In this document: in pieces, positions 1 to 37,522 of the stretch
Layout: each line of letters opens with the position of its first letter
How positions within the stretch are numbered: position 1 is the first letter of the stretch
Source of the DNA: Anthoceros angustus
Taxonomy: Eukaryota > Plantae > Anthocerotophyta
Reading direction: 5' to 3'
DNA: 64,000 nt
Assembly (NCBI GenBank): GCA_010909165.1
Contig: MU008158.1
Coordinates: forward strand, 1,637,478 to 1,701,477
Made by a program: the position numbers and the translations under genes
The notes under the pieces: model-generated
Database searches by the model: none
What the model was told of the DNA's origin: nothing
Seen by the model: the letters and a program-made list of their open reading frames with translations, nothing else

Positions 1-388
1 AAACCCCAAAGTTCGCTGGAACTGCCATCTCTGGTTCTTCCTACCAATGCCCAACGGCAAGCAACACTGAATCCTGTGAAGAGGAGGCCTGACTGAAGAT
101 ATGCTACAGGTAGCAGAGACAGCATCCAGGTAGGTCCTGCTCTTGCCCCGACGAAGGAGAGTGCAAGTAGTGAGGGATAGTAAGCCAGAGCAAACAGCGC
201 GATGGGAATGAAAAGTTGGAGAAGAGGTTGCATCCAACGACAGAGAGCTTGGTTCAGGACTTTCCCAAGAGTCAGCAAGTCCTGATCTGAAGTCTGTTGT
301 TCCATGTTGTGTGGTTTCTTCAAGATGTCAATCGCTTCGGTCTGGTTATTGGGTTCCGCAGTGCATGTTAGAGCTGGCATCTGCTGGT
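1..388 (-). repeat. Extra copy of a coding segment of the NRPS-like gene (matches 3780-4167); probably continues upstream of the window
   Basis: Direct match of 1-388 to 3780-4167, ending at ...GGCATCTGCTGGT, after which the sequence switches to a copy of 1442 onward. Confidence 0.95.
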
Positions 389-391
389 TAC

Positions 392-1929
392 TGAGATTGA
401 ATTTTGTGTTTCTCTTAATGCGCAAGCTCGTATATCTATTGAACCAAACAACTACTTTGTGATCGACCTTGATGACAAGCCAATGGTCATTAAGCCAATG
501 GTCATTAAGCCAATTGTCATTAAGTCAATGGTCATTAAGCCAATGGTCATTAAGTCTATGGTAGAGGCTCAACAATTCAAATCGGTGGAACACTATTGGA
601 TATCAACTTAGAACTTGAACTATTTAGTGGCTAGCTAGGTAAGAACTAAGGTAGACATTTGATAACCCGGATCAACGAAATGCGGATTCTAAGAATTTAG
701 ATTTTTTGTGGTTGGGTAAGACAAGAAGTAGAGGCTCAACAACTCATATTAATGAATCAACATATTCTAAGAACTTGAATTGTTTCAAGGTTCGATTGTT
801 TATTAATGCAAGAATCTCACTATCATGTTGGGTGTTAATGAAAACAATAAAAATAGTAATCAAGCATTCTAGTGTTCATTTATTTTTAATATATAATATA
901 AAATTAAGTTTTTAAGTATAAAGAAATTTGTGAGCGGAGGCTCTAGAAGTTTTGCCACAAGACAAGCTAATTGTGTAGAATTCTTGAAGTTTTGCCACAA
1001 GACAAGCTAATTGTGTAGAATTCTTGCCACAAGACAAGCTCATTGTGCTGGAGCAGGCGCCTACTTCACCTCCCAGCTTTGTAACTAGGTCCACGAAAAG
1101 AAGCTCAACAAAAACAAAGCAAAGGGTCATGGCAGTCTGGCCATGAAGCGGTGGTGCCAAGGAAGGCAAATTTGTGAGCGGAGGCTCTAGAAGTTTTGCC
1201 ACAAGACAAGCTAATTGTGTAGAATTCTTGAAGTTTTGCCACAAGACAAGCTAATTGTGTAGAATTCTTGCCACAAGACAAGCTCATTGTGCAGCGGAAC
1301 GAACTGTGCCTACTTCACCTCCCAGCTTTGTAACTAGGTCCACGAAAAGAAGCTTTGGCGTGCCACGTTAGGTGGTCAAGTACCTTGTGGTACTTTGCCG
1401 CATGTTGCTCTAATTTTGTAACATTTGTGTCTTGGTTCTGTTGAGATTGAATTTTGTGTTTCTCTTAATGCAGCAAGCTCGTATATCTATTGAACCAAAC
1501 AACTACTTTGTGATCGACCTTGATGACAAGCCAATGGTCATTAAGCCAATGGTCATTAAGCCAATTGTCATTAAGTCAATGGTCATTAAGCCAATGGTCA
1601 TTAAGTCTATGGTAGAGGCTCAACAATTCAAATCAGTGGAACACTATTGGATATCAACTTAGAACTTGAACTATTTAGTGGCTAGCTAGGTAAGAACTAA
1701 GGTAGACATTTGATAACCCAGATCAACGAAATAGCGGATTCTAAGAATTTAGATTTTTTTGTGACTGGTTGGGTAAGACAAGAAGTAGAGGCTCAACAAC
1801 TCATATTAATGAATCAACATATTCTAAGAACTTGAATTGTTTCAAGGTTCGACTGTTTTATTAATGCAACTGAATCTCACTATCATGTTGGGTGTTAATG
1901 AAAACAATAAAAATAGTAATCAAGCATTC
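392..1929. repeat. Dispersed ~480-bp direct duplication (392-869 and 1442-1929), each copy containing about five 15-bp units AAGCCAATGGTCATT
   Basis: Near-identical copies; the first differs mostly by small deletions. The 15-bp arrays are at ~477-560 and ~1527-1610. Confidence 0.9.
925..1353. repeat. Duplicated ~185-bp unit with internal ~35-42-bp repeats (TTGCCACAAGACAAGCTAATTGTGTAGAATTC)
   Basis: 925-1105 matches 1168-1353; the core GCCACAAGACAAGCT occurs six times. Confidence 0.9.
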
Positions 1930-2890: not shown

Positions 2891-3381
2891 ACTTTGATAG
2901 AATATAATTGGTCTTTTGGATAAATCCATCATAACTCTTTAGGCGTTTTTATTTCTAATAAATTCACATAAATAAATACTCTTCATGGCGTACTCGCTAT
3001 GGCTTCATCAATATGTGCGGAGCTATGATGCACGGCCAGATGTAGCTTGTGAAGAGAACCATATGTATTAAAAATTATATAAAATATTATTAATATTTGA
3101 TGTAAAATAGTAAATTTAACCATAAATTTATAATACAAAACGACATGATGCTAATAACTTGGTTGGGAATCGAGAGAGGCAGAAGTGCAGCCTCCACCAC
3201 AAGCAAACGCCCAAATTGACACGCCGGATTAGTGTACACTGGTTCAAAGTATCCGTATGAAACCAGACTGCCTGCCTACTTTAAGCTACCTAGGCCACAA
3301 GGCGAGGAATTGTTGAATCGTTCCAGGACTTCGGTGAGGAGGTTGATCTTGAGCTTAATTGCAGTTGCCCGTTTTCCTCGG

Positions 3382-6300
3382 TCAGTAAGCAGCAATGACT
3401 TCACCTTTCATTCCAAGTGCAAGTGCCCCCAATTCCGCACTGTCCTCCATCTTCACGCCCGGTAACAGCAACGCCCTAGAACCGACATAGCAGCTCTGTC
3501 CAATCTCATTGGCTTTGAACCCTACTTTTCCTCCTTCATACAAATGCCCGAAGATGAGAGCATTTCTGCCCACAGCGGTGCCGGCTCTGACTGTCAGCAG
3601 GTCAGGGTTGAGAGTCAGAAGGGTGTCCATGTATGCCACTCTTCCTGCAGAGTCCCCAATGTTTGCACCACGTATTATGTTTTGACCAGGAGATAGAAGG
3701 ACCTACATAATATTGAGTATAAGAGAATAATTGTAGGTTGTGCAAGAATTTTGTAACATTTGTGTCTCGTAGGGATGTGAAACCCCAAAGTTCGCTGGAA
3801 CTGCCATCTCTGGTTCTTCCTACCAATGCCCAACGGCAAGCAACACTGAATCCTGTGAAGAGGAGGCCTGACTGAAGATATGCTACAGGTAGCAGAGACA
3901 GCATCCAGGTAGGTCCTGCTCTTGCCCCGACGAAGGAGAGTGCAAGTAGTGAGGGATAGTAAGCCAGAGCAAACAGCGCGATGGGAATGAAAAGTTGGAG
4001 AAGAGGTTGCATCCAACGACAGAGAGCTTGGTTCAGGACTTTCCCAAGAGTCAGCAAGTCCTGATCTGAAGTCTGTTGTTCCATGTTGTGTGGTTTCTTC
4101 AAGATGTCAATCGCTTCGGTCTGGTTATTGGGTTCCGCAGTGCATGTTAGAGCTGGCATCTGCTGGTACCTGCTGGGAGCAATTTCAAGTTTCCCTCCCG
4201 ACATTGCTGGACAACCTCCTCTGGATTGTGTCTGCTCTTGCTCCCTAGCCTCTGGAAGTTGCAGCATGACATCAGATTGCTTAAGTAGCCTCTCCCAAGT
4301 TGGAGGCAGAGGCTGCCCTGTTCGGAGATATTGAGCAATGCTATATGCCAGGGACCGACCATGGTCAATAGAAGCATTTTGCAAAGCTGTCTTGGCTGTG
4401 ACCATATCAATGCTCTTTGTGCCATTTATGGGGTTGAATCGAAGACGCTCGGTGACCTCTCCATCTAGAATCTCAGTCAGGTGTACCACGCCCACGTCCG
4501 TGTAAGGGTAGGCAGCTTCGTCCCAAGGTTTGGTGCAGTCGAGCGCATCTTCATTCTCAGACATGTCTTCTGAGACAGGACGCAGCTGCAGCTGAAAGAC
4601 GTACTTCACTCCATCCGCAGAGAGCAACCTCTTTCGAAAGTCATCTGCCAAGAACCGGGGCGGGCGAGTATCACTTGGACTTCGAGGAATTGCTCCGGTT
4701 TCAGGTGGAATGAAGTCGAATGCCTCCACTTTGCCTTCCTCTTCGCCGAAACGCTGGTCTGCAGGACGCATTCTGAACTTGACGTAGTACTCCTGTGAGC
4801 TTCCAGACACGCGAAAGAGCCTGGCCACATTGGAGTAGTAGTGCAGGTCAGCATAGGAATTAGGTAGCCGGAGAGAGTCCCATGATGCAATGCCAGACCG
4901 CGGATTCTTCTGCACAAAGGCCACCCTCTGCTCGTGGCTTTTCATCATGTAGTTGACGAAGTCCACTATGTTCCTGCAATTGAACGCTCTCCCTGACTTC
5001 AGTGTCAGATCAAGCATGCTCTGCTCAGCATCTGATTCTGCCCCGGGTCTCAGAAGTCTCACCGACGCTCCCCGTCCATCGCTTCTGGCATCGTCGTCGC
5101 CACTCAGACTGTTGCTGTGGCGGATAATGATTCCATAGGTCTTGCCAGGAGCGAAGACGTCATGCGCCGGGATGGTGTCCGGAAGGTTGCTCAATATGGT
5201 CAAGGTGCCCTTCCCTGCCACTCCCAGGCGGTGGAAGTATCTTGCATCCACGGACAGCGTGGTCTTGGCAATGCTTGCAGCTAGGTTCGCAACCAATTTC
5301 TTGTAGAGAGGATCCATCTCCCGGATTCTGAAGTCTGTTGTTCCATGTTGTGTGGTTTCTTCAAGATGTCAATCGCTTCGGTCTGGTTATTGGGTTCCGC
5401 AGTGCATGTTAGAGCTGGCATCTGCTGGTACCTGCTGGGAGCAATTTCAAGTTTCCCTCCGACATTGCTGGACAACCTCCTCTGGATTGTGTCTGCTCTT
5501 GCCCCGACGAAGGAGAGTGCAAGTGCCCCAATTCCGCACTGTCCTCCAGCTTCACTCCTGGCAAAAGAACACCCTGTGCTCCAACAACACATTTCGAACC
5601 TACCTCCACCCCGCCAAAATGCATAGAGTGCTTGTATTTCGCTTGCTTCACAACAGTCTGGGTCACGGTGCTGGTGATGATCTTTGCGAAGTCCCCAGAT
5701 GAGATTCATCTCCAGCATTAGCAGGTCAGGGTTGAGAGTCAGAAGGGTGTCCATGTATGCCACTCTTCCTGCAGAGTCCCCAATGTTTGCACCAAGTAAT
5801 TGTAGGTAGAATGAGCCAAGGAGAGAGCCTTTGCCGAGCTCAAGGAAGCTGTTGGACAAGAGCAGGTTGATTGCTTGCCATGTTGCCTATCCTGGCCCCT
5901 AAGCTGCGCAGATAGCACACCAGTGTTTGCGTCCCGGACAAGAACAGGGTGAACTTCACGTGTGCAGCAGTTAGGAGGCGGTGCACCAGCCAGACTCTGA
6001 AGCCCAGGTCGGAATTGACCGGCAATGCTCCATCCTTGCTCGTTCTCTGGGAAATAGCATTGCCTACGAGGTGCCACTTGAGCAGGCAGGTGATGGCGCT
6101 CAGAGTGAGGCCGTAGACCAAGTAAGCAGCCCCAGAGCAAGCAACTACTAGCAAGGCATCCTTGGGTTGGCAAACCTGTAGAGGAAGTTGAAGATGAGCT
6201 CAGAGTTCTGGAAGGCTAGGAGAGGTGACAGACCCGCCAGCGCCCATGGCAGAGTTGCTGCAACCGGAAAGCAGAAGAAACCAATCCGAACAGTGGAAGC

Positions 6301-9300
6301 AAGTCCTTTCAGTGGACTGCTGTCCTGTATGACCAAGAGCCTGGAGGTAAGCCAGAGAAAGGAGATGTAGGACACGATGGCGGAGACTGTGGACACCAGT
6401 CCCACAACGTACAGCCCCACAGATGCCTCAGAGCTATATTGTACTGCCCTCCTCTTGCAATTTTCACTCCCTGCACCATCAAAGTTGAAGCGACATTCAG
6501 ATCACAGTAGGTAACATGTGATGTGTTGTCATCTGCAGCATTCTGGTATATCATCACGGGGTTTTCCACACCAACGTACACGCCTCCTGCTTTCAGAACA
6601 GAGCCAGTAACTGCCACTGAATTGCTCCGAGGATAGCTCTGTCCTTCCCAAGGCAGGAATGCTTGCTCCAGCGTCTAGGATGGTGTCGGAAGGTTGCTCA
6701 ATATGGTCAAGGTGCCCTTCCCTGCCACTCCCAGGCGGTGGAAGTATCTTGCATCCACGGACAGCGTGGTCTTGGCAATGCTTGCAGCTAGGTTCGCAAC
6801 CAATTTCTTGTAGAGAGGATCCATCTCCCGGATTCTGAAGTCTTCTTCGTTCACCTCTTGATCTTGTTGTTTCTTGGATTTGGATGATGTGTTGTCATCT
6901 GCAGCATTCTGGTATATCATCACGGGGTTTTCCACACCAACGTACACGCCTCCTGCTTTCAGAACAGAGCCAGTAACTGCCACTGAATTTGCTCCGAGGA
7001 TAGCTCTGTCCTCCAGCTTCACTCCTGGCAAAAGAACACCCTGTGCTCCAACAACACATTTCGAACCTACCTCCACCCCGCCAAAATGCATAGAGTGCTT
7101 GTATTTCGCTTGCTTCACAACAGTCTGGGTCACGGTGCTGGTGATGATCTTTGCGAAGTCCCCCAGATGAGATTCATCTCCCAGCATTAGCAGGTCGGGA
7201 TCAAGCAAGGCATTGACTCCACGGATGGATGCCATGTTGCCTATCCTGGCCCCTAAGCTGCGCAGATAGCACACCAGTGTTTGCGTCCCGGACAAGAACA
7301 GGGTGAACTTCACGTGTGCAGCAGTTAGGAGGCGGTGCACCAGCCAGACTCTGAAGCCCAGGTCGGAATTGACCGGCAATGCTCCATCCTTGCTCGTTCT
7401 CTGGGAAATAGCATTGCCTACGAGGTGCCACTTGAGCAGGCAGGTGATGGCGCTCAGAGTGAGGCCGTAGACCAAGTAAGCAGCCCCAGAGCAAGCAACT
7501 ACTAGCAAGGCATCCTTGGAGTTGGCAAACCTGTAGAGGAAGTTGAAGATGAGCTCAGAGTTCTGGAAGGCTAGGAGAGGTGACAGACCCGCCAGCGCCC
7601 ATGGCAGAGTTGCTGCAACCGGAAAGCAGAAGAAACCAATCCGAACAGTGGAAGCAAGTCCTTTCAGTGGACTGCTGTCCTGTATGACCAAGAGCCTGGA
7701 GGTAAGCCAGAGAAAGGAGATGTAGGACACGATGGCGGAGACTGTGGACACCAGTCCCACAACGTACAGCCCCCACAGATGCCTCAGAGCTATATTGTAC
7801 TGCCCTCCTCTTGCAATTTTCACTCCCTGCACCATCAAAGTTGAAGCGACATTCAGATCACAGTAGGTAACATGTGATGTGTTCTCTGGTCTAGCAGAAA
7901 GATTGATGATACATACCGGTGTGTTGGTAGCAACGTTAACCTGGTAGTCTTGATGCTTCTTGGCCACCTTTTCACCTATCTCTGTCCTTCCCAAGGCAGG
8001 AATGCTTGCTCCAGCGTCTAGGATGGTGCCCTGCTGCAACACGGCGTAAGGTCCCACGACGGAACCAGTTCCGATTCGGATAGGTTGGAATCTGACGACC
8101 CCTCCCCGCACGTCATGGCTTTGGACGGTGGCACCCTCGCTTACGACAGCACCGTTGCCAACATAGAGCAGGGAGGGATCTGTGATATCCGTACTGTCCA
8201 GAAACACATGCTTCCCAATCTGAGCTCCAAGCAGACGGTACCAGCAGGAGAGGAAGACGGTTCCTCGGAGATGGATTCCCACCACATGGTTGGAGGCGAA
8301 ATCACAGAGACGATAGAGCACCCACCACTGCACATAATCCAAGGACCAGAGGGGAATGGCTGTCTGGATGGAGTAGTTCGGCCTTAGCAAAGTGGTGGCG
8401 AAGAAAGAGATGCTGAGAGCAGTCAAGGCAAGGTAAGCAAGCCAGGCCACAGGTAAGAGCAGTATGGAGATGAGGAGGGAGGAAAGCAGAGGCAAAGCTG
8501 CCTCTGAGTCAGCAGTACCAGCGGTATAGAGCAGCTTGGCAAGCTGCCCGTAGACGACGAAGGCCGGGAAGATAATCACAGCTGCAATGTACAGCAGCCC
8601 CAGCACCTGAAGGCAAGTGATGACCAGCTTCCGCCTAGGAGAAGGCTCCAGAGCGGATGCCAGATCGGCATCCGGAATGAGCTCTGTCTCAATCTCCTCC
8701 TCCACAAGCCCCCTGTCATACCCAGCATGATCCGGAGCAGGCGCCTGTACGGCCACTGCATGCACATGGGAGATCTGACCCTTGCTTGCTGCAGGAGTGG
8801 TGGAGGCCTTGTTGAGCAGGGAGTGCGCCATGCTGCTGAGCTCGGAGATGGAGCCCGCAGTGTAGACATCGATAGCCGCAATGTGGATTCCCAGAAACTC
8901 CGAAAGCTTCTGCGCTGCCCACACCACCCCAACAGAATCGATCCCGAACGACGTCAACACATCCGTGGTGGAAATCTCGTCGGTCTCCAATCCGGTCCTC
9001 TCTCCCACGAGCTTCACAAGATAATCTCGGATTTCCCTCTCGCCCTTCATCCCCCCAGAAGCTGCTTCCTCCACGGAAAGGGAGGTCACATCCTTCCCAT
9101 ACGCACGCTCTCCGACGCTCCCCTGTTCCCTGGGCTCCGGCTTCCCCCTCGCCTCCTTGGCCAGGAGGCCATCGGCCATGTCCGCGAGCTCGGCGATGCA
9201 TCCCGCGGTGTAGATATCGATGGCCGCAATGTGGAGCCCCAGGAAATCCGACAGCTTGGACGCCGCCCACACTATCGCCACGGAATCAATGTTGTAGCTG

Positions 9301-12300
9301 GTGAAGCTGTGCGTCTCAGAGATCTCCGGCGCAACAATCCCGGTCTTCTCTGCCAGAATCTGGCGCAAGAACGCGGTGATATCCGCCTTGGTGGGCCTCC
9401 CACGGCCATGCCCAGCTGCAGTCCCGACATGGCTCGAATTCAGGCTGTGGGTCCCGCGGCCAGCATCAGGGAAGGAGGACGACTGCATGTTGATCGGGGC
9501 AGAGTCGCTTCTCCTCATCAGCCTCGCCCTGCCCCTGGCTCTGGGGCTCACCAGCACATTCGGCTTCGCAGTGACGAGCTTCCCGTCCAGAAACCTCTGC
9601 AAACATTCCAGCCGCCGGATTTTCCCAGACGTGGTCTTGGCGATGGTTCTGGGCTTCACCAGATTGACGTGAGCCACCTCCACGCCGTGCTCCGCCGCCA
9701 CAGCCGACTTGATCTTCCCCACCAGCTCCGGGTCCACGTACTTGTCATCCCGCACCTCCGTCACCACCACGATCCCCACATCGTCCGGGCCGGAGCCCGC
9801 GGCGTCGCCCACGTTGAGAATCCTGTGCAGCGCCGACACCGGGGCACCGAAGGCGGCGCTGCAGCCGGGGCGGATCCCCGTGGAGCAATTTTCCACCGTC
9901 TTCTCGATGTCGGAGGGGTAGATGTTGCGCCCGGCCACGATGATGAGGTCCTTGATGCGTCCCGTGAGGAACAGCATGTCGCCCACCAGCCGCCCCAGAT
10001 CCCCGGTGCGGACAAAGGTGCGCCCTGCTTGGCCTGCAGCGTTGCTGGGTGGATGCCTGCTCTTGACAACATTGTGGAACACCTCCCTGCTCAGCTCCTC
10101 CAGCCCCCAGTACCCGATCCCCGCGCTGGGGCTGCTCACCCAGATCTCCCCTTCCTTCCCCTCCGCCGCCTCCTCCCCGGTTTCGGGATTCACAATCCTG
10201 ATGTCCATGTCCTGGTTCCCCCGCTCCACGTACCCGCAGCATACCCTGTTCTCCCAGTCCAGGTAAATCGGCCGCCTCTGTCCGTACGCAACGCACACGA
10301 AGACGCAGTTCTCCGCAAGCCCGTATGCCGGAGCCATGATCTGCACACACCATTTCCCATTCATGTGTTGCAATTCACGACTGCTGCAATGAAAACGGGA
10401 AGAGAAGGATGGAGGAAAATTCACCTGCTCTCGGAGGCCGGATGGTCGGAATATGTCCAAGAATCGGGCCACGGTCTGGTGGCGGACGGGCTCGGCAGAG
10501 ATCATGATGAAGCGGAGGGAGGAGAGGTCGAAGGTGGGCACGGGCCGGCCGCTGCTTCTCAGCATCTGCATCCTGCGGATGGTGAGCTCGAAGGCGAAGT
10601 TGGGGCCAGCAGAGTGCGTGGCGCGGTAGGTGCTCAGGGCCTCCATCCACAGCAAGGGCCTCTTGATGAAGGTGCCGGGGGAGAAGAGGACCGCAGTCCC
10701 TCCCGACACCAGGGCGGTGAAGAGGCCGCCGATGAGGCCCATGTCGTGGTACTGCGGGAGCCAGCTGACGAGAACAGTCCTGGAGCTGCTCTTGTACTGC
10801 CGCCGCATGAGCTTCACGTTGTGGATGAGACCCGCTTGGGTGATCATGACGCCCTTGGAGTCGCCTGTGGATCCCGACGTGAACTGGAGGAAGCACACGT
10901 CTGCCGGATGCGGGGCCTCGAATTCGAACGTCTCTGCGGATTCGGAGGACTCGGAGCTGGAGTAGCCGTTCTCTCTGGGGCTGGTGCTCAGGGCTGGCTC
11001 GTCCTGGTTGAAATTCAAGCTGCTGCTGCTGCTGCCGCCTTCGCTGCCGGCCGTGAAGCTTCCGCTGCGGGCCAGGTCGGAATTGAAGCTGGAGCTCCTC
11101 CTGGGCGACGGCGGGGGCCGCAGAAACCTGAGCGACCTGGGCGACACAGCCTGGGAGTCCGCGTCCGCCGGGGACGAGGACTTGCTGCTGGTCTGCCCCG
11201 GACTGAGCTTGTCCAGGAGCCAGTTGGTCCACCTGGGAGCGGCCGTTCCAGAGCGCGCATTCCGGGTCCACAGGTCTGTGTGATACCACGGCAGGTCCGG
11301 CCACCGCGGCTCCTGGGAGCCCACCGAGCCCGAGGACGTGATGCGGGTCTTGAGCATGCCTGCCTTGACGCCGATGTGGTAGGACGAGGTGGACAGAATG
11401 GCCTTGGCGGCGCAGGATTTGGCCACGTTTTGCACCTTGAGCAGAGCTTGGGCGCTGCCTGTCGCCCCGGGGTCGGGCGGGATGAGCGGCACTGGTAACA
11501 CCTGCCGCGCCCACAACACGGAGTCGCCACAAAGTCTGTGTCAGATGGAGTGCTCCAACATTCTTGGAACCACCATCCCATGTTCGGTTGAAACGCTACT
11601 TACTCGAGCGCGGAGGCAGCCGAAGAACGCTTCCACGAAATCCAGGCCCGGCGGATGCAGGAGCAAGACGCGGTCCCCGTACTTGAGCTTGGACCTGTTG
11701 GTGAGAAGGCGGTGCGCTACGATGGAGGCTCGCACATTCAAGTCGGCGTAGGTTCTGGCGTCGGATTCCTTGCCCTGATCGTCCAGCCAAGTGTAGAGCA
11801 CCTTGTCCTTGGCCACTTCGTGTTTGGCATAGAAATTGAGGTAGGCGTCCAAGGTGGGCAGGTCTGGGAACGTCATCCCGGGAGCTTCACTCAGCTCCTC
11901 CACATTGTAGCCTGGCAGTGACCAAATCCCACCGCGGCAACCGCTCTCCACCTCTGAGTCAGGCTCACGCTCAGGTACTTGGATTAGCCTCTGCAAAGAA
12001 ACCTCAAAAAAATCAGTGACATGCTCCCCGCAGCCTGCCCGAGACACCTCCAGAGATGTATCGACAAGAGCTTGATTACAGCCCAGTCCTTTGTGTGTGG
12101 AAACCAAAGTCTGCCTGCCTCAAGTAATCACCTTGACATAAGGCAGAGTGAGGTGCGTAGAGCCGAAGTGTTGCGCGACTAAGTTGATGGAGAAGGCGGC
12201 ATTTCTCTCGGTGAGCTCAAAAGCTAACAAGCCTCCAACGTAGTACGTGTTATTCTGCCCTTGCAATTTGCTCATGTCGTCATAGAAGCCAGCTTTCATA

Positions 12301-13861
12301 TCTGCAATTCGTCCACGAATCCGTTAGAAGGAAGTCGTGATAGGCAGATGGCCAACACCCAGCATTGTACCCACCTCTACTCTGTACATGGGGGAAATAA
12401 TTCCACTTCCGTTGCAAAATAAACTCTTCCACGGTTCCTCCAATTTTCTCCACATCTTCATAAACCAAGGCGGTGACTTTGTCGGGCAGAATTCGTGTAT
12501 TCCCGTAGGACCAAAACAGGAAAACGTCGGTATCGGGAAAAAACCTTTGCATGGCGACAGGGTGGCCTATCGTGTTGGGGTCCTGGATATACTGTTTGAA
12601 ATAAAAGAAGCCTGCTGGAAGGTGGTGTAGGCCCTGGATTCTAACCACCGTCGTGTAGTACTCCACTGTGCGCACCTTGGAGAAGCAGATGCTTTCCGCT
12701 TGCGTCCATTGCAATGGCCCGGCTGCTGCTGCTGCTGCTGCATCCACATCGTCCGGCGGGGAGGAAATCCCATCACTTCACTCTGTCTGAGACGGATTTC
12801 CAGAATTGCAACGCAAGCAGCAGCCAGCACTTACTTGCAGGCGAGGTGGAGGACCGGTATGCGGGATTGCTGCGGAACGGGAGAGCCCCGGTGACGATGA
12901 TCTTGTCGAACTCCAGCTCCAGCGGCGCGGAGTCCCCGGCGGGGTTTGCGACCTGGACGGTGACAGGGCCGGCGTCCGGTCGGCAGATGCGGGTCACCCT
13001 GGTGTCGCAGCGGACGTCGGAGAGCGAGGCGGCCAGCTTGCGCCACAAGGTGGTGTACCCGCCCTTCACCCGCGCGATCCTGCCGAGCAGCGAGGTGCGG
13101 TTGAATTCGTGCAGGTACGCGTAGGGGATGTCGTCCGTGTAGCCGTAGCCGGAGCTGGTGAAGGCGCAGGCCGTGGTGAGCGGCACCCCGTTCCTGTAGC
13201 CCCGGGATTTGAGAAACTGGTCCGCCGGCTCGCTGGCAAGCGAGCTGACCGCGTGCACGCCGCTCCTGCCGCTGGCCACGGCCGCCGCCTCCGCCTCCGC
13301 CTCCGCCTCCGCCTGCAATTTCACGGTGAGCGGCACCATCTGGACGAAATCCTTGAACACGGGCAGGTCCTGCCCGGCTCCCCCCGCGTCCACGTCCAAC
13401 ACCATGTGCTTGTGCCCGCCCAGATCCTCCATCTCCACGCCCAGCTCGGACGCCAGAGCCGCCATGGTCGGCGAGCGTTCCAGCGCCAGGACCTGGCCCC
13501 CGAGATCATACGTCCTCCCTGCACCGTCGCATGTGAAGGAAATGACATGAATGTGATCACGCGCGTGAATTGCGAGCAGTCGCCACTGGCCACTCGCCAC
13601 TCGCCTTCAAGAGCAAGCACGCAAGCAAAAGCAAGGTGCAAAGCAACCAACCTTGGATGGGGACGGACTCGCACATCCCGCCCACGGTATGGTGCTGCTC
13701 CAGCACGGTGACATGCTGGAAGCCCAGGCGCTCCAGGGCCCACGCGGCGGCCAGGCCGCTGGGGCCGCCGCCCACCACAGCGATTCGGGCATGGGTGGCG
13801 AGGCCGGGGTGGAGGCCTCGGAGGAGGTCGGTGGCTGGCGGGGCGCCAGCCTCTCCATCAT
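3382..13861 (-). CDS. Multidomain NRPS-like enzyme, ~2,700 aa when reconstructed: FAD PUFA-isomerase-like + fatty acyl-AMP ligase + 2 carrier proteins + 3 TM/left-handed beta-helix repeats with an inserted catalase-like (AOS-like) heme domain; disrupted as assembled
   Basis: Motifs: VVGGGPSG and WNYFPHV..QGQNNTYYVGG (FAD domain); FLQFTSGSTGDSKG, WLPQYHDMGLIG, YGLAE, RTGDLG, GRIKDLII, KTTSGKIRR (FAAL); NIDSV and GIDSV (carriers); LLGAQIG, SLGARIG, LLGANIG (repeats); RYFH, RHSN, RSLAY (catalase-like). Approximate exons: 13861-13652, 13518-~12835, ~12776-12376, 12301-12133, 11990-11604, 11501-10425, 10340-7941, 7826-6844 joined to 5336-~3760, displaced 5885-5795, then 3670-3382. The start at 13861 needs a +1 correction at 13840-13843. 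Confidence 0.85.
4300..5250 (-). other. Domain: catalase-related heme domain (allene oxide synthase / hydroperoxide lyase-like)
   Basis: ARYFHRLG (distal His, 5231-5233), IIIRHSNSLSGDDDARSDGRGASVRL, YYVKFR, RFNP, HGRSLAY (RxxxY proximal Tyr, 4343-4345). Confidence 0.85.
5337..6843. other. Mosaic insertion of nine same-orientation fragments copied from within the NRPS-like gene
   Basis: Fragments match 4065-4241, 3916-3947, 3416-3449, 7006-7196, 3596-3670 (extended by unique sequence 5795-5885), 7230-7883, 6885-7012, 7980-8028 and 5170-5336. The joins that can be checked overlap by 8-10 nt. Confidence 0.9.
8814..9396 (-). other. Domains: two tandem phosphopantetheine carrier (ACP/PCP) domains (~9396-9163 and ~9040-8814)
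   Basis: FTSYNIDSVAIVWAASKLSDFLGLHIAAIDIY and LTSFGIDSVGVVWAAQKLSEFLGIHIAAIDVY; Ser codons at 9282-9284 and 8934-8936. Confidence 0.85.
9580..11900 (-). other. Domain: fatty acyl-AMP ligase (FAAL)-type adenylation domain
   Basis: LLLHPPGLDFVEAFFGCLRA, TSGSTGDSKG, SWLPQYHDMGLIG, GPNFAFE, GRNIYPSDIE, KTTSGKIRR. Confidence 0.9.
12133..13861 (-). other. Domain: FAD-dependent polyunsaturated fatty acid isomerase-like (PAI / amine-oxidase fold)
   Basis: Rossmann GxGxxG, GG motif (TVGGMCES), YDLGG, GYGYTDDIPYAY, and the spliced C-terminal segment WNYFPHVQSRDMKAGFYDDMSKLQGQNNTYYVGGLLAFE. Confidence 0.75.
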
Positions 13862-14549
13862 CGGCCCCGGCCCCGGGGAATAGATAGTATGTGGCTGGTG
13901 CTGGGGACGGGGGACCAGGACCTGCACCCGCACCCGCACCCGCACCCGCACCTGCTCCCGCTCTAGACGGGACTTGGCTTTCCCGCTCGCAGGCCCATCG
14001 GCCGGCCGCGATGAGGAGCTTTGTACTCCGTCCCTCGGACGCCGCTTCGGTCTTGTCAACGTCTACAGCAGACGGCCGGACATTCCCGCGGAGGTTGCGT
14101 AGGCATCTTGAGGCTACTTAGGCATGTCCGACGCGCACCCCAGTCGCACGGCTGTATGCGCTATGCACTATGCACTATGCACTGTCGGGGCATGGCATCC
14201 TCCTTCTTCCAAATTCCTCGCCAGTGCCAACATGAAGTTTTTTCGCCCGCAGCCCTGGACTCCCGGGCCGCCCGCTCCAGCCTGTATTAATACATGGCTA
14301 GGGGAATGTTGCTCACGCGTTGTCGGCGTCATTTGTCATCATCGTGCCCGCCTTTGGCCCACTGCCGGCACTGTCACGGCCCGGAGCGCGACCGGAAACA
14401 CCGACGCCAACGGAGACATCCACGCCAACACTAGCAAGGCACCGCATCAAGTATGGATGCCTGCCCTCTGCCATTTTGTCGGCCTCGTTTGTCACTATCG
14501 TGCCTTGCCCACACTTCGAAACTCCCGATTAGTAATAAAGGAGCATTAA

Positions 14550-24083: not shown

Positions 24084-25265
24084 TCAGGCCTCGGTTTTCT
24101 GCCACTTGAGGGGCTTCACCACCTCCCAGGTGAAGTCGGGGTCGGATCTGCCGAAGTGGCCATAGGCAGCGGTCTTCTGGAACCGCTTGTTGCCTCCTCT
24201 CTTGAGGTCCAGGTTGATGGTGATGAGGCCGGGGCGGAAGTCGAACGCCTCCTTGACAATCTTGAGGATCTCGGGATCCGACAGCTTTCCAGTGCCGTAA
24301 GTGTCCACGAACACGGACAGAGGCTCCGGCACTCCAATAGCGTAGGACACCTGCACAATGGCACGTCGGGCAAGGCCAGAAGCAACGATGCTCTTGGCAG
24401 CCTGCCTCACAATGTAGGCCCCGGAGCGATCCACCTTAGTGGGATCCTTCCCGGAGAAGGCACCGCCTCCGTGAGCTCCCCAGCCACCGTAGGTATCAAT
24501 GATGATCTTCCGACCAGTGAGGCCGGCATCACCATGAGGCCCCCCGATGACAAACCTGCCAGACGGGTTGAGGTGGAAAATGGTGTTCTCATCCAAGTAC
24601 TTCTCCGGAATCACAGGCTTGATCACATGCTCCCTCAAGTCCGCCGCAATCTGGTCGTTGGTGACGCTCTCGTCGTGCTGAGTGGAGATCAAGACGGTGT
24701 GCACCCGCAGCGGCACCATGGCCCCGCCCTCGTTCCTATACTCCACCGTCACCTGCGTCTTGCCGTCCGGTCTGAGCCAGCCGCACACCCCGTTCTTGCG
24801 CACCTCCGTGAGCTTGGCCCCGAGCTGCGTGGCGAGCACGTGCGACAGCGGCATTAGCTCCTCCGTCTCGTCCGTGGCGTAGCCGAACATGTGGCCCTGG
24901 TCTCCCGCCCCGATTTCCTCGGGCTTCTTGGTGAAATGGCCGTGCACACCCTGCGCGATGTCAGGGCTCTGCTGCTCGATGTTCACCAGCACCTTGCAGT
25001 GGTCCGCATCCAGCCCGACGGCGTCCGACACGAACCCGATCTCCCGGCACGTGTCCCGCACGATCTTCTCGTAGTCGATGTTGGCCTTGGTGGTGATCTC
25101 CCCGAACACCATCACCATATTGGTCTTGGTGCACGTCTCGCACGCCACCTTGCTGTCCGGGTCCTGCTCCAGGCAGGCATCCAGCACCGCGTCCGAGATC
25201 TGGTCGCACAGCTTGTCCGGGTGCCCCTCGTTCACCGACTCGGACGTAAACAAAAAGGTCTCCAT
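24084..25265 (-). CDS. SAMS: S-adenosylmethionine synthetase, 393 aa, intronless CDS with a 5'-UTR intron ending just before the ATG
   Basis: [37 protein letters not shown]. Acceptor GTGCAG|ATG at 25266 and donor CAG|GTGAGA at 25393. Confidence 0.97.
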
Positions 25266-26298
25266 CTGCACCACCAGATCCGCCACACTGACACTCCATC
25301 AAGAAACCACACCACAACAACAACAACAACAACACCACCAACACCTTGTGCGACAACATCAACACCTTCTGCTTCCCCTAGCCGGCATCTCACCTGGCCC
25401 GGATGCCTGGACCGGAACGCCAAGAAAGCCGCTACGCTGCGCTCCCGCACGAGGCCTGGAACAGGAGGAGCCCGGGCAGGAAGGCGCGGGCGGGAAGCAA
25501 AGCGACGGGGAGAAATGCCTGACTCTGCGAGAACGTATACCGCCCTGCTGCTTATCAACGGGCAGGGAGGGAGACTGGCTTTAGGGCGTACGCTCCCTGG
25601 CTGCAGGGAAGGCTGTAAAAAAGGTGGGCAGGACTGGGTAAACCCAGTCAATCTGGCAGTCGCCTCAACGCGCATCGCTGCCGTCCAGAGCGGGGCGATC
25701 AGCGGGTCGCCACAGGTTCAACGAACATAACCCTAAACTCGTACGCCGGGGGACCTAGGGTTTGGCGTGCGACTGGATCGTGAGGGAGAGGGGGCGGTAA
25801 CATGCAGCCTGCACGATAGCGGGCAGCAGCGCAGCAATTCGGGAACATGCCACGCTTTTACAGCTGTACACGCGGCCATGGCTCACAATGTAATGGCACC
25901 ACGCTGCTCCAGCGCCTGGCCAGCTTGCTTCCAGCTTCCGTTCCGTGTGACTTTGTGCTTTACACTTTACAACAGCCCTGGATGGGATCGGACGCAGCTT
26001 CCGCGCATGTGGGCATTATTGGGGTTGATGCAGGGCTCGGCTGGCTGCTGCCTGCCAATGCTGCAGAGGGCAGGGAGTCCCCATCCACACCCCCGGGACA
26101 TTACAATGTACATCCGCATCCAATCAACAAAGGAAATTTTATTGCGTACCTATACAACAAGTAGGGAATTGTATGTAAGGAATTGTCTATGATCTACATA
26201 TCTAGCAAGAAGCCCCCTGCTGCGGGAGGGAGGGGGTACAGAAACGGGGAGTCTCTCTCTCTCTCTTCTACCTCGCTTGCTGCTGGGAATCTTCGACT

Positions 26299-29200: not shown

Positions 29201-29826
29201 CTGCCCGACTCCCCACCAACCCCAGACATCTCCACACAACCCAGACCCTCGTCACAAGATGGAGTCCGACTGGCAGAAACATCAACATGCAAAACTCCAT
29301 CTCCCTCCCCAGCAACACAAACACCGCCCTCATCCTCAGCACCGACGTCACGACTCAGACAACCCGCACTGTCCTGCTCATTTTCGTTCTCGTTGCCCTG
29401 CAAGGCCTTGCCCTTCCCAGGCGTGATCCGGGGCCTGTTCAGGCTCTCCTCCAGCTGCTGGTGCAGCAGATGGCGCTTGGACACCAGGAACTTCCGGGGC
29501 TGCACAGCTGCAGGCACCGCGTAGTCCGGGTCGTTGGCAGCGCATCTGGCGGACCTGCAGATATGCTTCCTGCCGGGAGTGTACGCGCTCCCGCAGCTCT
29601 GCTCCTTGGGGGCCTTACTGCCACTCCTGGGCACCGCAGGACTGTCGCAGGACACCGAATCGTATGCCCCGGGCGAGGCACCCCGCTCCCGCCTGGGAGA
29701 CGGGGCGAACAGCTGCCTGGACGCCTTCACGGGAGTCAGACAATTCTCCCCTTCCGCTCTGGCCTTGGACGCCCTCCCGCCAATGAAATTGGGATCGCAA
29801 TTCTCCGTAGCTCCATGCTTCAACTC

Positions 29827-29857
<31 letters not shown>

Positions 29858-29982
29858 TGCTTGGAGGGAGTTGGAGTCTTGGGCTTGGGATTCCCCCCTG
29901 CCTGCCTCATCTTGAACGCTCTGGAATCCACCAACACATTAGACTCGGCCCCAGCGCCAACGGAAAGCCCCACACTCTGCAT
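26299..29982 (-). CDS. TPX2-domain microtubule-associated protein (MAP20/MDP60/TPXL-like) with a long acidic N-terminal extension
   Basis: 3' exons encode QPFKLQTE, RIPIARGLPWTTDEPE, VRALDRAEFD, EEEEVKRLRQEMVPKAQLMPYFDHPFQPR and RLTVPKEPNFH; TGA at 26299-26301; large first exon 29982-~27477. Confidence 0.85.
28876..29167 (-). repeat. 57-bp coding minisatellite x5 (EVAQDGARxCDVGMCPGDL)
   Basis: Period of 57 bp, in frame within the TPX2-like ORF. Confidence 0.95.
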
Positions 29983-36687: not shown

Positions 36688-37522
36688 TCAGAGACCTTTG
36701 AGCAACTCAGAAAAGCCTGTGAGGTTGGACCATCTCTCCAAAGCCGACGCCGAGACGACGAAGGCGCTTTTGGAGCTGTCCGCTTCTTGCTTGGACACTG
36801 CAAGGGACCAAGGAGCGCAACGTCATGGACCGCCTAAACAGCAACAGGTTGGAGCAAGAAGCGACGAGAACCGGAATCACACATACCTGCAGTCTGCAGG
36901 TCCGACAAAGCCGAGGTAAACGTGCTGGCTTCGGTCACCTCCTCAGGGCTAGAGCTCACCTGCACAAGCCAAGGGACCCCGAATACACATGAATATTTCT
37001 TGCACTTGCAATGCCGAATTGTGAGCTGTCGGATCCAAATAACAGCCGGTAGCGCACCTTGGACAGGGCAGCTTTGACATCACTTATCCAGGCCTCACCG
37101 GCGCCGCTGAGCAGGCTGTTGGCCGCGGGGAAGTCACTCCCATCCAGAGCCTGCCCCACCTTACTCAGCTCGTACACGGCGGCCTGCACCGACTCTGTCT
37201 CCTTCTGCAGCGACTTCACCTCCACCCGCTTCTGGATCTTCTTCTGCCTCCCGGCCTTCACCTTCTCCAGCAAGCTGTCATCCTCGTCGGCCTCCAGCAG
37301 CGCGAAGGCAGGCTCCCCCCGCAGAGACAAGAAGAGGGACACCCCGGCCCCGGCTCCCGCCACCAAATCCCTCCTGGACAGGCTCCCGTTCGAACCTCCC
37401 TCGCCACCCTGCCGGCTCTGCTCGCACCGCACGGACACGCAAGCCCGCGTCGCCGGCCGGGACGCCCTCCGGGTGCAGGAAGCGCAGGACAGCGGCGCGC
37501 ACACTCCGATCGCGGCCGCCAT
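36688..37522 (-). CDS. MPH2: Thylakoid lumenal 16.5 kDa protein (TL16.5/MPH2-like), 3 exons
   Basis: Bipartite transit peptide with a twin-Arg motif (LSRRDL) and AFA cleavage site; LEADEDDSLLEKVK, VYELSKVGQA, C-terminal SKSAFVVSASALERWSNLTGFSELLKGL*. Confidence 0.85.

What the first reader, a model, noticed from the sequence alone, without database searches (positions are those of the whole stretch)
3382..13861. Single-polypeptide lipid assembly line in a plant: isomerase-FAAL-ACP-ACP-membrane Pls-like repeats with an embedded AOS-like catalase
Seen: six pieces of the ORF track (13557-13778, 12773-13600, 12280-12747, 11541-12107, 6675-11519, 3602-5317) plus 3382-3639 and an unlisted exon at 12133-12301 join into one ~2,700-aa protein. 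It has an FAD domain, a FAAL adenylation domain, two DS-motif carriers, three TM + G(T/S)xxxxxxxxxLGAxIG beta-helix repeats and a catalase-like domain. Known: FAALs load acyl chains on carrier proteins instead of CoA; A-T-(TM-C)x3 is the layout of epsilon-poly-L-lysine synthetase (Pls/PosA, TIGR02353-type terminal domain); catalase-related heme domains such as coral allene oxide synthase act on fatty-acid hydroperoxides. Inference: a membrane-anchored enzyme that isomerises a PUFA, tethers it, modifies it oxidatively and condenses or polymerises it, giving an unknown oxylipin conjugate or lipid polymer. I recall similar architectures annotated only as uncharacterised proteins in other land plants, so the likely novelty is the chemistry and product rather than the gene's existence.
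Basis: partly seen in the sequence, partly recalled or inferred. Interest (0 to 1): 0.9.

Follow-up and report, generated by a model that had tools for sequence, protein, structure and literature searches.

The report
Conserved plant fatty-acid megasynthase gene
This is a real gene for a membrane enzyme of about 2,700 residues, kept across land plants and never characterised, that joins a fatty-acid loader, two carrier domains, a flavin domain, a heme domain and a membrane module like that of poly-lysine synthetase; in this window its 3' half is scrambled, most likely by mis-assembly.

Summary
On the minus strand, from about 13829 to 3382, lies one gene. Its domains in order are a flavin domain whose only full-length solved relative is the Propionibacterium acnes PUFA isomerase, a fatty acyl-AMP ligase, two carrier domains, and three (TM pair + beta-helix) repeats of the Pls/PosA type. 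A heme domain sits between repeats 2 and 3 and is closest to coral allene oxide synthase.

Colinear proteins of 2,300-2,650 aa occur in liverworts, lycophytes, ferns, conifers, monocots and dicots, all unnamed. A 2021 paper noted "HemY-FAAL-catalase" plant proteins of unknown function. I found no paper that mentions the Pls-like module in plants.

The joins need correcting. There are two extra in-frame introns (10424-10341, 7915-7826). Window 5180-6686 is not an intron: it is a patchwork of copies of the gene's own exons. The real coding sequence for repeat 3 (5720-5882) is displaced into that patchwork. Read contigs from this species and a relative give a simple colinear open frame.

New here: the closest non-plant relatives of the heme domain are fused to the same flavin domain and a carrier, often with a FAAL and a thioesterase or hydrolase. 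None of the 12 tested carries a lipoxygenase domain. The product is unknown.

The parts
13652..13829 (-). Exon 1 (5' limit unresolved): start of the PAI-like flavin domain, with the GxGxxG FAD-binding fold
   Evidence: Pfam NAD_binding_8 and Amino_oxidase. Homologues align from 13829. GT donor at 13651. No in-frame ATG upstream; an ATGATG near 13860 lies in another frame.
12835..13518 (-). Exon 2, PAI-like flavin domain (intron 1 = 13651-13519)
   Evidence: tblastn colinearity; homology-guided GT-AG choice
12375..12722 (-). Exon 3, PAI-like flavin domain (intron 2 = 12834 to about 12723; the acceptor is ambiguous within a CAG run)
12132..12301 (-). Exon 4, end of the flavin domain (intron 3 = 12374-12302).
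   Evidence: The whole domain in homologue P0001 matches PDB 2b9w at E 2.6e-35.
11604..11897 (-). Exon 5, N-terminal start of the FAAL domain (intron 4 = 12131-11898; intron 5 = 11603-11502)
   Evidence: Pfam AMP-binding and NCBIfam FAAL models; splice choice
10425..11501 (-). Exon 6, FAAL domain including a lineage-variable Ser-rich insert
10341..10424 (-). Intron 6: 84 nt, GT-AG, in frame and free of stops, so hidden inside the long ORF
   Evidence: A 28-residue insert absent from all 8 aligned homologues, exactly bounded by GT and AG. Not covered by the read laying.
7916..10340 (-). Exon 7. It holds the rest of the FAAL domain (to about 9570), carrier 1 (about 9371-9177), carrier 2 (about 9040-8835), TM1-TM2 (about 8627-8385) and beta-helix domain C1 (about 8264-7950).
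   Evidence: Pfam PP-binding x2 and AMP-dom_DIP2-like; TIGR02353; hydropathy and motif scan. The carrier duplication shows as direct repeat D6. Sub-coordinates were derived arithmetically and are approximate.
7826..7915 (-). Intron 7: 90 nt, GT-AG, in frame and free of stops
   Evidence: Skipped in contigs of X2 and X9, retained in X1 and X3; sequence
6687..7825 (-). Exon 8, first part: TM3-TM4 region (about 7763-7455), beta-helix domain C2 (about 7289-6880), and the first residues of the heme domain (from about 6843)
5180..6686 (.). Patchwork insert that interrupts exon 8 in the window. Its pieces copy 7977-8028, 6885-7012, 7230-7883, 7003-7199, 3916-3947 and 4065-4245. It also holds the displaced true exon piece and one arm of the 157-nt flanking repeat (5180-5336 = 6687-6843).
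   Evidence: the repeat finder; self-BLAST. No contig of X1 or X2 carries its junctions; all four runs join 6687 (organism B: 6862) directly to 5179/5336.
3760..5179 (-). Exon 8, continued: cAOS-like heme domain (to about 4300), a low-confidence linker, and TM5-TM6 (about 3994-3827)
   Evidence: PDB 1u5u at E 8.7e-26; Foldseek on the model of homologue P0001; hydropathy
5720..5882 (-). Displaced true piece of exon 8, which belongs between 3760 and 3595. It encodes the adapter helix and the G-S...LGAxIG motif that open beta-helix domain C3.
   Evidence: Contigs of all four runs go 3760 > 5882..5720 > 3595. 5799-5875 is unique in the window. In-frame translation.
3675..3759 (.). AT-rich filler that replaces the first 84 nt of the displaced piece in the window. 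It is related to the 67-nt tandem repeat at 2746-2888 downstream.
   Evidence: Self-BLAST: 2746-2820 and 2822-2887 match 3662-3735. It is not in the read contigs' path.
3382..3595 (-). End of exon 8: beta-helix domain C3 and the stop codon. 3596-3674 duplicates the last 79 nt of the displaced piece.
   Evidence: TIGR02353 positions 604-685 of 695; colinear with homologue C-termini; read contigs
1..388 (-). A further 100% identical copy of 3780-4167 (the TM5-TM6 coding region), cut by the window edge

Best explanation
This is one gene for a multi-pass membrane 'assembly line' that works on a fatty acid.

Shown by homology:
- A FAAL-type adenylation domain sits next to two phosphopantetheine carriers.
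- An N-terminal flavin domain belongs to the P. acnes PUFA-isomerase family.
- A heme domain belongs to the catalase-related (coral allene oxide synthase) family. It keeps the proximal Arg/Tyr and the distal His.
- A Pls/PosA-type C-terminus has six TM helices and three left-handed beta-helix acyltransferase-like domains, each with an invariant His.

Inferred mechanism:
1. The FAAL makes acyl-AMP and loads a long, probably polyunsaturated, chain as a thioester on the carriers instead of on CoA.
2. The flavin and heme domains act as a coupled tailoring pair on that chain. The flavin domain rearranges or oxidises a double-bond system. The heme domain then uses the resulting peroxide or activated chain.
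3. The three beta-helix domains, held at the membrane, take the acyl-S-pantetheine as donor, as LpxA-type and acetyl-CoA-type hexapeptide transferases do. They pass the acyl group to a hydroxyl or amine acceptor, possibly repeatedly as Pls does with lysine.

The product is unknown. In this window the gene's 3' half is scrambled, most likely by mis-assembly, while the organism's reads show it intact and spliced.
For: - Domain hits.
- One polypeptide: 114 of the 120 listed plant homologues span the whole C-terminal 1,157 residues, and four checked in full are colinear with every exon. One X2 contig of 4,621 nt, spliced at intron 7, runs from upstream of 9299 to downstream of 3300 as a single open frame.
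- Heme ligands are under selection: distal His 118/118, proximal Arg 118/118, Tyr 114/118.
- Flavin-heme-carrier coupling: all 12 non-plant proteins I scanned among the best heme-domain matches carry an Amino_oxidase flavin domain. Eleven also carry PP-binding, and several carry a FAAL and a thioesterase or hydrolase. None has a lipoxygenase domain. Their flavin domain is 32% identical to the plant one over its full length, and their FAAL is 38% identical. They share the Phe-His distal signature.
- The Pls-like module is used with acyl rather than aminoacyl chains elsewhere. P0208 reads FAAL-ACP-KS-AT-KR-Pls-like, and the cluster of P0190 (961 aa, matched over its Pls-like TM and beta-helix part) also holds Nannochloropsis proteins named PKS or NRPS, up to 6,656 aa. 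These are the top non-plant hits to the plant module.
- Each beta-helix repeat has an invariant His.
- The AlphaFold model (pLDDT 84) shows TM hairpin + adapter helices + beta-helix three times, with the heme domain between repeats 2 and 3.
Against: - No activity of any domain has been measured for any member (searches found nothing).
- The heme domain has Phe-His and Lys where allene oxide synthase has Thr-His and Asn. Its reaction may therefore be neither AOS-like nor catalase-like.
- PAI works on free fatty acids without net redox (my recollection of Liavonchanka 2006; the paper was not readable here). I did not test its substrate-binding residues.
- TIGR02353 scores (127-181 bits) are far under its 423-bit cut-off.
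- The acceptor, and whether transfer is iterative, are pure analogy.
- Exons 1-6 and intron 6 rest on homology only.
- The window itself does not encode the intact protein.
Confidence: 0.55

Rival explanations
1. The assembly line is the same, but the flavin and heme domains form an oxidase-plus-peroxide-handling pair and do no oxylipin chemistry. The amine-oxidase-fold flavin domain oxidises or desaturates the tethered chain with O2 and releases H2O2. The fused catalase-fold domain destroys that H2O2 or uses it as a peroxygenase.
For: The heme domain's fixed partner in relatives is the flavin domain, never a lipoxygenase in those tested. The AOS-specific Thr and Asn are absent. The fold is catalase.
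Against: The domain is much nearer to allene oxide synthase than to H2O2-dismutating catalases (E 1e-25 against 1e-3). The distal Asn needed by catalases is also missing. The flavin domain's only full-length solved relative is an isomerase, not an oxidase.
Confidence: 0.2
2. The scrambling of 5180-6686 and 3675-3759 is real in the sequenced individual, as a recent replication-based rearrangement. This copy would then be a fresh pseudogene.
For: The window sequence itself. Piece borders overlap by a few bases, like microhomology joints. Another first-stage note reports a 'locally assembled mosaic locus' elsewhere in this genome (s1-262150, unchecked).
Against: Contigs of two runs of the same organism, one keeping intron 7 and one spliced, show the simple colinear order, as do two runs of a related species. 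None carries a patchwork junction. The spliced X2 contig's order (3760 > 5882..5720 > 3595) cannot be made from the window's order by linear splicing. The copies are 98-100% identical. X1 carries 1-nt deletions at 7160 and 7770, which lie at the ends of the source stretches copied into the patchwork (7003-7163 and 7521-7773). This suggests that noisy long reads fed the assembly.
Confidence: 0.15
3. The pieces are several neighbouring genes (a flavin oxidase, a FAAL with carriers, a membrane acyltransferase, a catalase-like protein) and not one polypeptide.
For: Exons 1-6 were not covered by the read laying. Some database entries are shorter (1,800-2,000 aa, or 430-600 aa catalase-only fragments).
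Against: Reading frames join across every GT-AG intron without stops. More than a hundred annotated proteins from all major land-plant groups carry the full set in the same order. One spliced contig spans from upstream of 9299 (carrier 1) to the stop.
Confidence: 0.04
4. It is a true Pls-type homopoly(amino acid) synthetase.
For: TIGR02353 matches in three stretches, and the TM/beta-helix layout is the same.
Against: The adenylation domain scores 260 bits on FAAL models against 97 bits on the amino-acid adenylation model. It carries the DIP2/FAAL-type C-terminal subdomain, not the NRPS one. Bacterial Pls-type hits with the NRPS-type subdomain score lower (110-140 bits) against the plant module than the best acyl/PKS-linked hits do (P0154 254, P0190 171, P0208 147 bits).
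Confidence: 0.02

Closest known systems
[quoted passage not shown]
   Same: An adenylation domain and carrier are followed by six TM helices and three tandem soluble C1-C3 domains of left-handed beta-helix type. There is no canonical condensation or thioesterase domain. The model matches in three stretches.
   Different: The loader is a FAAL, not a lysine A domain. There are two carriers. A 350-residue heme domain is inserted between C2 and TM5. An extra flavin domain sits at the N-terminus. Scores are well below the family cut-off. The product is presumably an acyl ester or amide, not a polyamide.
Coral allene oxide synthase (catalase-related domain of the Plexaura homomalla AOS-lipoxygenase fusion, PDB 1u5u / 3dy5)
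   Same: It is the best solved relative by sequence (E 8.7e-26) and by fold (TM 0.77, 26-28% identity). The proximal Arg...Tyr heme ligand pair and the distal His are conserved.
   Different: The residue before the distal His is Phe, not Thr. The distal Asn is Lys in plants (Thr in the bacterial and chytrid relatives). There is no lipoxygenase partner: the conserved fusion partner is a flavin domain plus a carrier.
[quoted passage not shown]
   Same: It is the only full-length solved homologue of the N-terminal domain (residues 28-452 against 7-423, E 2.6e-35). It shares the FAD-binding amine-oxidase fold.
   Different: PAI is a free-standing soluble enzyme. Here the domain is fused to a FAAL and carriers. 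Catalytic and carboxylate-binding residues were not compared.
Uncharacterised bacterial and chytrid proteins with the order FAAL - cAOS-like heme - PAI-like flavin - ACP - thioesterase (for example Archangium sp. WP_407755965.1, Spizellomyces punctatus XP_016610660.1)
   Same: They carry the same four modules, each detectably homologous to the plant one: flavin 32%, FAAL 38%, heme 30-35% identity. They also share the Phe-His signature.
   Different: The domain order is permuted. Release is by a thioesterase or hydrolase, not by the Pls-like membrane module. They have no TM segments of that type. The bacterial gene examined stands alone among unrelated neighbours.
Plant 'HemY-FAAL-catalase' proteins noted by Patil et al. 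2021 (eLife, PMC8460268)
   Same: This is the same protein family. That paper lists rice, soybean, oak and other members and calls their function unknown.
   Different: That paper does not describe the Pls-like membrane module, the PAI or AOS affinities, or the bacterial and chytrid permuted relatives.

Membership tests
Pls/PosA family non-ribosomal peptide synthetase (TIGR02353) | Three tandem C-terminal soluble domains (C1-C3), each preceded by a pair of TM helices | tested here: met
   Three motif occurrences and three TM clusters in the read-supported model. The AlphaFold model of homologue P0001 shows hairpin + adapter helices + beta-helix three times. TIGR02353 matches in 2-3 stretches.
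Pls/PosA family non-ribosomal peptide synthetase (TIGR02353) | Score at or above the curated cut-off of the family model (423 bits) | tested here: not met
   127 bits for the window's big ORF, 41 bits for the last exon, and 181 bits for P0001:1300-2576
Pls/PosA family non-ribosomal peptide synthetase (TIGR02353) | Amino-acid-activating adenylation domain | tested here: not met
   FAAL models score about 260 bits against 97 bits for TIGR01733. The Pfam AMP-dom_DIP2-like C-subdomain is present.
Pls/PosA family non-ribosomal peptide synthetase (TIGR02353) | Iterative polymerisation of the loaded monomer onto a free acceptor | not testable with these tools
   Needs enzymology
Fatty acyl-AMP ligase (FAAL) | ANL-fold domain whose best matches are FAAL models (FadD32, FAAL28 and others), with a FAAL-type C-terminal subdomain | tested here: met
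   NF004509 and NF038339 at 260 bits are the top hits, though below the full-length cut-offs because the domain is split over exons. PF23024 gives 36.9 bits.
Fatty acyl-AMP ligase (FAAL) | Hands the acyl chain to a carrier (fused or adjacent ACP) | tested here: met
   Two PP-binding domains with the conserved Ser lie directly downstream
Fatty acyl-AMP ligase (FAAL) | FAAL-specific insertion and blocked CoA pocket | not tested
   Patil et al. 2021 report these features for plant FAAL-like domains in general. I did not examine them in this sequence.
Catalase-related allene oxide synthase (cAOS) | Catalase core fold with proximal Tyr ligand, partner Arg, and distal His | tested here: met
   Alignment to 1u5u; conservation 114-118 of 118; Foldseek TM 0.77
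Catalase-related allene oxide synthase (cAOS) | Thr before the distal His, and a distal Asn (Thr66/His67/Asn137 of 1u5u by the alignment) | tested here: not met
   Phe in 114/118 and Lys in 117/118 plant sequences
Catalase-related allene oxide synthase (cAOS) | Works with a fused or adjacent lipoxygenase that supplies the hydroperoxide | tested here: not met
   No lipoxygenase domain in the gene, nor in the 12 nearest non-plant relatives scanned. A separate lipoxygenase elsewhere in the genome is not excluded.
PAI-type polyunsaturated fatty acid isomerase | Full-length homology to PAI with an FAD-binding fold | tested here: met
   E 2.6e-35 over 425 residues for homologue P0001. The window's exons 1-4 are 51-66% identical to that homologue.
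PAI-type polyunsaturated fatty acid isomerase | Substrate-channel and catalytic residues; isomerase activity on a 1,4-diene | not tested
   The structure paper could not be read here. Activity needs an assay.

The most novel reading that the evidence does not exclude
Land plants keep a Pls-like membrane polymerase that, instead of lysine, repeatedly esterifies a flavin- and heme-tailored (hydroxy, epoxy or conjugated) fatty acid loaded by a FAAL. It would make a so far unrecognised oligo- or polyester or acylated membrane lipid. The flavin-heme pair would be a lipoxygenase-independent route to oxygenated fatty acyl chains, shared with myxobacteria and chytrids.
Probability: 0.15. Interest if true: 0.9.

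Novelty: new variant of a known kind. Interest (0 to 1): 0.62.

Why it matters
Plants are usually said to lack NRPS-type megasynthases. Here is one that is conserved from a hornwort-like plant and liverworts to cereals and trees, and that is transcribed. It combines four enzyme kinds known only from bacteria, fungi or corals, and no member has a known product.

The analysis gives concrete handles for experiments:
- Which domains to express.
- Which residues to mutate: the three beta-helix His, the heme Tyr/His/Lys and the two carrier Ser.
- The observation that the flavin and heme domains travel together with a carrier in other kingdoms. This points to a lipoxygenase-independent tailoring pair.

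It also warns annotators about this locus. The assembly is scrambled, and two introns are invisible to ORF-based reading.

Tried and rejected
- I read 5317-6675 as an intron, then rejected this. It is made of exon copies, and the read contigs do not contain it.
- I proposed a 55-nt intron at 3757-3703 to bridge the last two ORFs. I rejected it once the contigs showed the 163-nt piece belongs there.
- I considered a retro-copied cDNA origin for the patchwork and rejected it. The patchwork includes part of intron 7 (7826-7883).
- Word-indexed search with the heme domain alone found only plant fragments, so it was uninformative for origin.
- PDB sequence search with the TM/beta-helix part found only generic hexapeptide proteins. 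I found no solved Pls structure to compare with.
- Gene context of one bacterial relative showed unrelated neighbours.
- Literature searches for locus tags, for a PAI/AOS/carrier combination and for the Pls terminal domain in plants gave nothing relevant.
- A UV-induced FAAL-clade '4CL homologue' of Mesotaenium could not be tied to this family.
- The PAI structure paper was not held, so PAI residues were not checked.
Domain sub-coordinates were computed arithmetically and are approximate.
- The joined spliced protein was built only inside local scripts. It was used for frame checks and for local alignment to homologues already fetched. It was not sent to any database, family or fold tool. Those tools were run exon by exon by reference, or on the Marchantia paleacea homologue P0001.
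- Complex prediction, the second structure job and the atlas searches were not needed.

Full report
**What is there.** The minus strand between about 13829 and 3382 carries one large gene.
- Pfam finds an FAD/NAD(P) Rossmann and amine-oxidase start in 13557-13778. It finds AMP-binding in 11541-12107 and in the 1,614-codon ORF 6675-11519, plus two PP-binding domains, the DIP2/FAAL-type C-terminal subdomain and hexapeptide repeats in that ORF. It gives a weak Catalase hit in 3602-5317.
- NCBIfam ranks fatty acyl-AMP ligase models first (about 260 bits, against 97 bits for the amino-acid adenylation model). It also finds the Pls/PosA terminal-domain model TIGR02353 in the big ORF (127 bits) and in 3382-3639 (41 bits, model positions 604-685 of 695).
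- Neighbouring genes are ordinary nuclear genes of a photosynthetic eukaryote: SAM synthetase, SRP receptor alpha, a nucleotide-sugar/TPT transporter, MPH2 and an FGAM-synthase amidotransferase.
- Other agents' notes on this genome call it a probable hornwort. I did not verify that.

**One polypeptide, conserved across land plants.** A search with the big ORF returned 2,530 hits. The best 120 are all plant proteins, mostly of 2,300-2,650 aa, and most carry Amino_oxidase + AMP-binding + PP-binding + Hexapep + Catalase. They come from liverworts (Marchantia paleacea, 45% identity, the best hit), Selaginella, ferns, Cryptomeria, grasses and many dicots. They are named 'uncharacterized', 'Carrier domain-containing' or, wrongly, '4-coumarate-CoA ligase'.

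Homology-guided GT-AG splice choices give these exons: 13829(+)-13652, 13518-12835, 12722-12375, 12301-12132, 11897-11604 and 11501 onward.

Two further introns hide inside the long ORF because they are in frame and free of stops:
- 10424-10341 (84 nt) is absent from all eight aligned homologues.
- 7915-7826 (90 nt) was confirmed by reads (below).

The protein is about 2,700 aa. Its start is unresolved. No in-frame ATG lies upstream of 13829, while an ATGATG near 13860 sits in another frame at the distance that the homologues' N-termini predict. A 1-nt indel in the assembly or a short upstream exon would explain this.

**The 3' half of the locus is scrambled in the window.** The stretch between the big ORF and the catalase ORF is not an intron.
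- Window 5337-6686 is a patchwork of 98-100% identical copies of 7977-8028, 6885-7012, 7230-7883, 7003-7199, 3916-3947 and 4065-4245. It is flanked by a 157-nt direct repeat, 5180-5336 = 6687-6843.
- One piece inside it, 5799-5875, is unique in the window. It encodes a canonical repeat-opening motif.
- At the place where that motif is expected, the window has an AT-rich 85-nt filler (3675-3759), related to a 67-nt tandem repeat downstream at 2746-2888.
- Window 1-388 is yet another perfect copy, of 3780-4167.

**What the reads show.** I laid Logan contigs of two runs of the same organism (X1, X2) and two of a related organism (X3, X9) on 3300-9299. The run kinds are guesses on record. I call X2 and X9 RNA-like because they lack intron 7.
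- All four runs give the same simple path: ...7916 / 7825...6687 joined directly to 5179...3760, then 5882...5720, then 3595...3300.
- X2 and X9 skip 7826-7915 (GT..AG). X1 and X3 keep it. The colinear form is therefore seen both in runs that keep the intron and in runs that lack it.
- The X2 contig is 4,621 nt and is otherwise identical to the window.
- Joining the window pieces in that order gives a 6,540-nt frame with a single terminal stop.
- The spliced X2 contig's order cannot arise from the window's order by linear splicing.
- X1 carries many 1-nt deletions. Two of them (7160, 7770) lie at the ends of source stretches copied into the patchwork, which hints at noisy long reads in the assembly.
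- I put mis-assembly at about 0.8 and a real private rearrangement at about 0.15. Contigs show presence, not absence, so this needs PCR or long reads.

**Domain identities.**
- *Flavin domain.* In homologue P0001 it matches PDB 2b9w, the P. acnes polyunsaturated fatty acid isomerase, over its whole length (E 2.6e-35). The next PDB hits (putrescine oxidase, 1e-9) cover only the FAD-binding start.
- *Heme domain.* It matches coral allene oxide synthase 1u5u at E 8.7e-26, against about 1e-3 for true catalases. An AlphaFold model of P0001:1420-2576 (50-sequence alignment, mean pLDDT 84, pTM 0.69) finds 3dy5/1u5u first by Foldseek (E 1e-18, TM 0.77). Catalases follow at E 1e-12 and TM about 0.5.
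- *Heme residues.* By the 1u5u alignment, the distal His and the proximal Arg...Tyr are kept in 114-118 of 118 plant sequences. The residue before the His is Phe (Thr in AOS), and the distal Asn is Lys in 117 of 118. This is a distinct subfamily and not an allene oxide synthase by signature.
- *Membrane module.* The model's secondary structure shows, three times, a long TM helical hairpin, a short strand, two or three adapter helices and a beta-helix. The heme domain and a disordered linker sit between the second beta-helix and the third hairpin.
- *Beta-helix residues.* Each beta-helix has an invariant His. Parts of the beta-helices also hit WcaF, NeuD and other sugar O- or N-acetyltransferase models.

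**Relatives outside plants.** An exhaustive profile-free search with P0001:1377-2576 shows two things.

First, the best non-plant matches to the heme domain are not lipoxygenase fusions.
- Twelve were scanned. All carry an amine-oxidase flavin domain, and eleven also carry a PP-binding carrier.
- Four of 2,270-2,850 aa read FAAL - heme - flavin - carrier - thioesterase.
- Named members come from the myxobacterium Archangium and the chytrid Spizellomyces.
- Their flavin domain is 32% identical to the plant one end to end, and their FAAL is 38% identical.
- Most share the Phe-His signature, with Thr at the Asn position.
- The one bacterial gene whose context I read stands among unrelated genes.
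- The recurrence of the same modules in a different order is the strongest clue here that the flavin and heme domains work together on a carrier-bound chain.

Second, the best non-plant matches to the TM/beta-helix module are linked to acyl or polyketide machinery. P0208 reads FAAL-ACP-KS-AT-KR-Pls-like. The cluster of P0190 holds Nannochloropsis proteins named polyketide synthase or NRPS, one of them 6,656 aa. P0195 reads FAAL-ACP followed by the first repeat. Classical bacterial A-T-Pls proteins score lower. This module is therefore not confined to amino-acid polymerisation.

**Mechanism.** What is shown is homology and conservation. The rest is inference.
1. The FAAL adenylates a long-chain, probably polyunsaturated, fatty acid and loads it on the tandem carriers.
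2. The PAI-like flavin domain and the AOS-like heme domain tailor the chain as a pair.
3. The three beta-helix domains at the membrane use the acyl-pantetheine thioester as donor. Their His acts as a general base to transfer the acyl group to a hydroxyl or amine acceptor, once or iteratively as in Pls (Pls architecture from PMC7179176).

The main rival for step 2 is a flavin oxidase whose H2O2 is consumed by the heme domain. Nothing here identifies the substrate, the acceptor or the product.

**Novelty.** The family's existence and a 'HemY-FAAL-catalase' description are in print, with function stated as unknown (PMC8460268). A 2026 survey lists plant FAAL 'NRPS-like clusters' (PMC12820801).

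I found nothing in the searchable library on three points: the Pls-like membrane module in plants, the PAI and AOS affinities, and the permuted bacterial and chytrid relatives. That is absence of evidence in that library only.

I file it as a new variant of known kinds, a Pls-type membrane synthetase with a FAAL loader and a flavin-heme tailoring pair. It is not a member of the Pls or AOS families in the strict sense, since defining features of each were tested and not met.

**Method note.** The joined spliced protein was assembled only inside local scripts, for frame checks and for alignment to homologues already fetched. Every database, family, PDB and fold query used single exons by reference or the homologue P0001.

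Noticed in passing
window 1-388: A perfect copy of 3780-4167 (the TM5-TM6 coding region of the same gene) runs off the window's left edge. Its upstream border joins unrelated AT-rich sequence. It is either another sign of local mis-assembly or a segmental duplicate.
   Followed up: partly
window 392-869 vs 1442-1929; 924-1105 vs 1168-1354; 2755-2821 = 2822-2888: The 3 kb downstream of the gene is full of 95-100% identical direct repeats, including a 67-nt tandem pair. A relative of that pair was pasted into the gene at 3662-3735.
   Followed up: partly
window 10341-10424 and 7826-7915: Two short introns are in frame and lack stop codons. An ORF-based reading therefore silently adds 28 and 30 false residues to the protein.
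   Followed up: yes
window 13829-13960: No in-frame ATG precedes exon 1. An ATGATG near 13860 lies in another frame at the expected distance, next to a GC-rich hexamer microsatellite. I suspect a 1-nt assembly indel or a short upstream exon.
   Followed up: partly
window 27430-29982 (-): An 850-codon ORF has no Pfam match. It overlaps internal tandem repeats at 28875-29167 (period about 57 nt).
   Followed up: no
window 24084-25286 (-), 36956-37717 (-), 50608-51435 (+), 54776-56011 (+), 58061-59101 (-): Ordinary plant genes: SAM synthetase in a single ORF, an MPH2-like protein, an FGAM-synthase amidotransferase domain, the SRP receptor alpha N-domain, and a TPT/nucleotide-sugar transporter.
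   Followed up: no
proteins P0161, P0172, P0184, P0224; P0157, P0167, P0169, P0170, P0173, P0175, P0179, P0182: An uncharacterised family in myxobacteria, metagenomes and chytrids fuses an AOS-like heme domain to a PAI-like flavin domain. Most also carry a carrier, and some a FAAL and a thioesterase. No lipoxygenase domain was found in any of them. This family is worth its own study.
   Followed up: partly
proteins P0208 and the P0190 cluster (Nannochloropsis, up to 6,656 aa): P0208 is a FAAL-loaded polyketide-synthase-like protein that ends in a Pls-type TM/beta-helix module. P0190, which matches the same module, clusters with Nannochloropsis proteins named PKS or NRPS. This suggests that the module off-loads acyl chains in other eukaryotes too.
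   Followed up: partly
window 8807-8942 vs 9155-9290: The two carrier domains are a 74% identical tandem duplication at the DNA level. Some homologues (for example tomato P0091) seem to have only one carrier.
   Followed up: no
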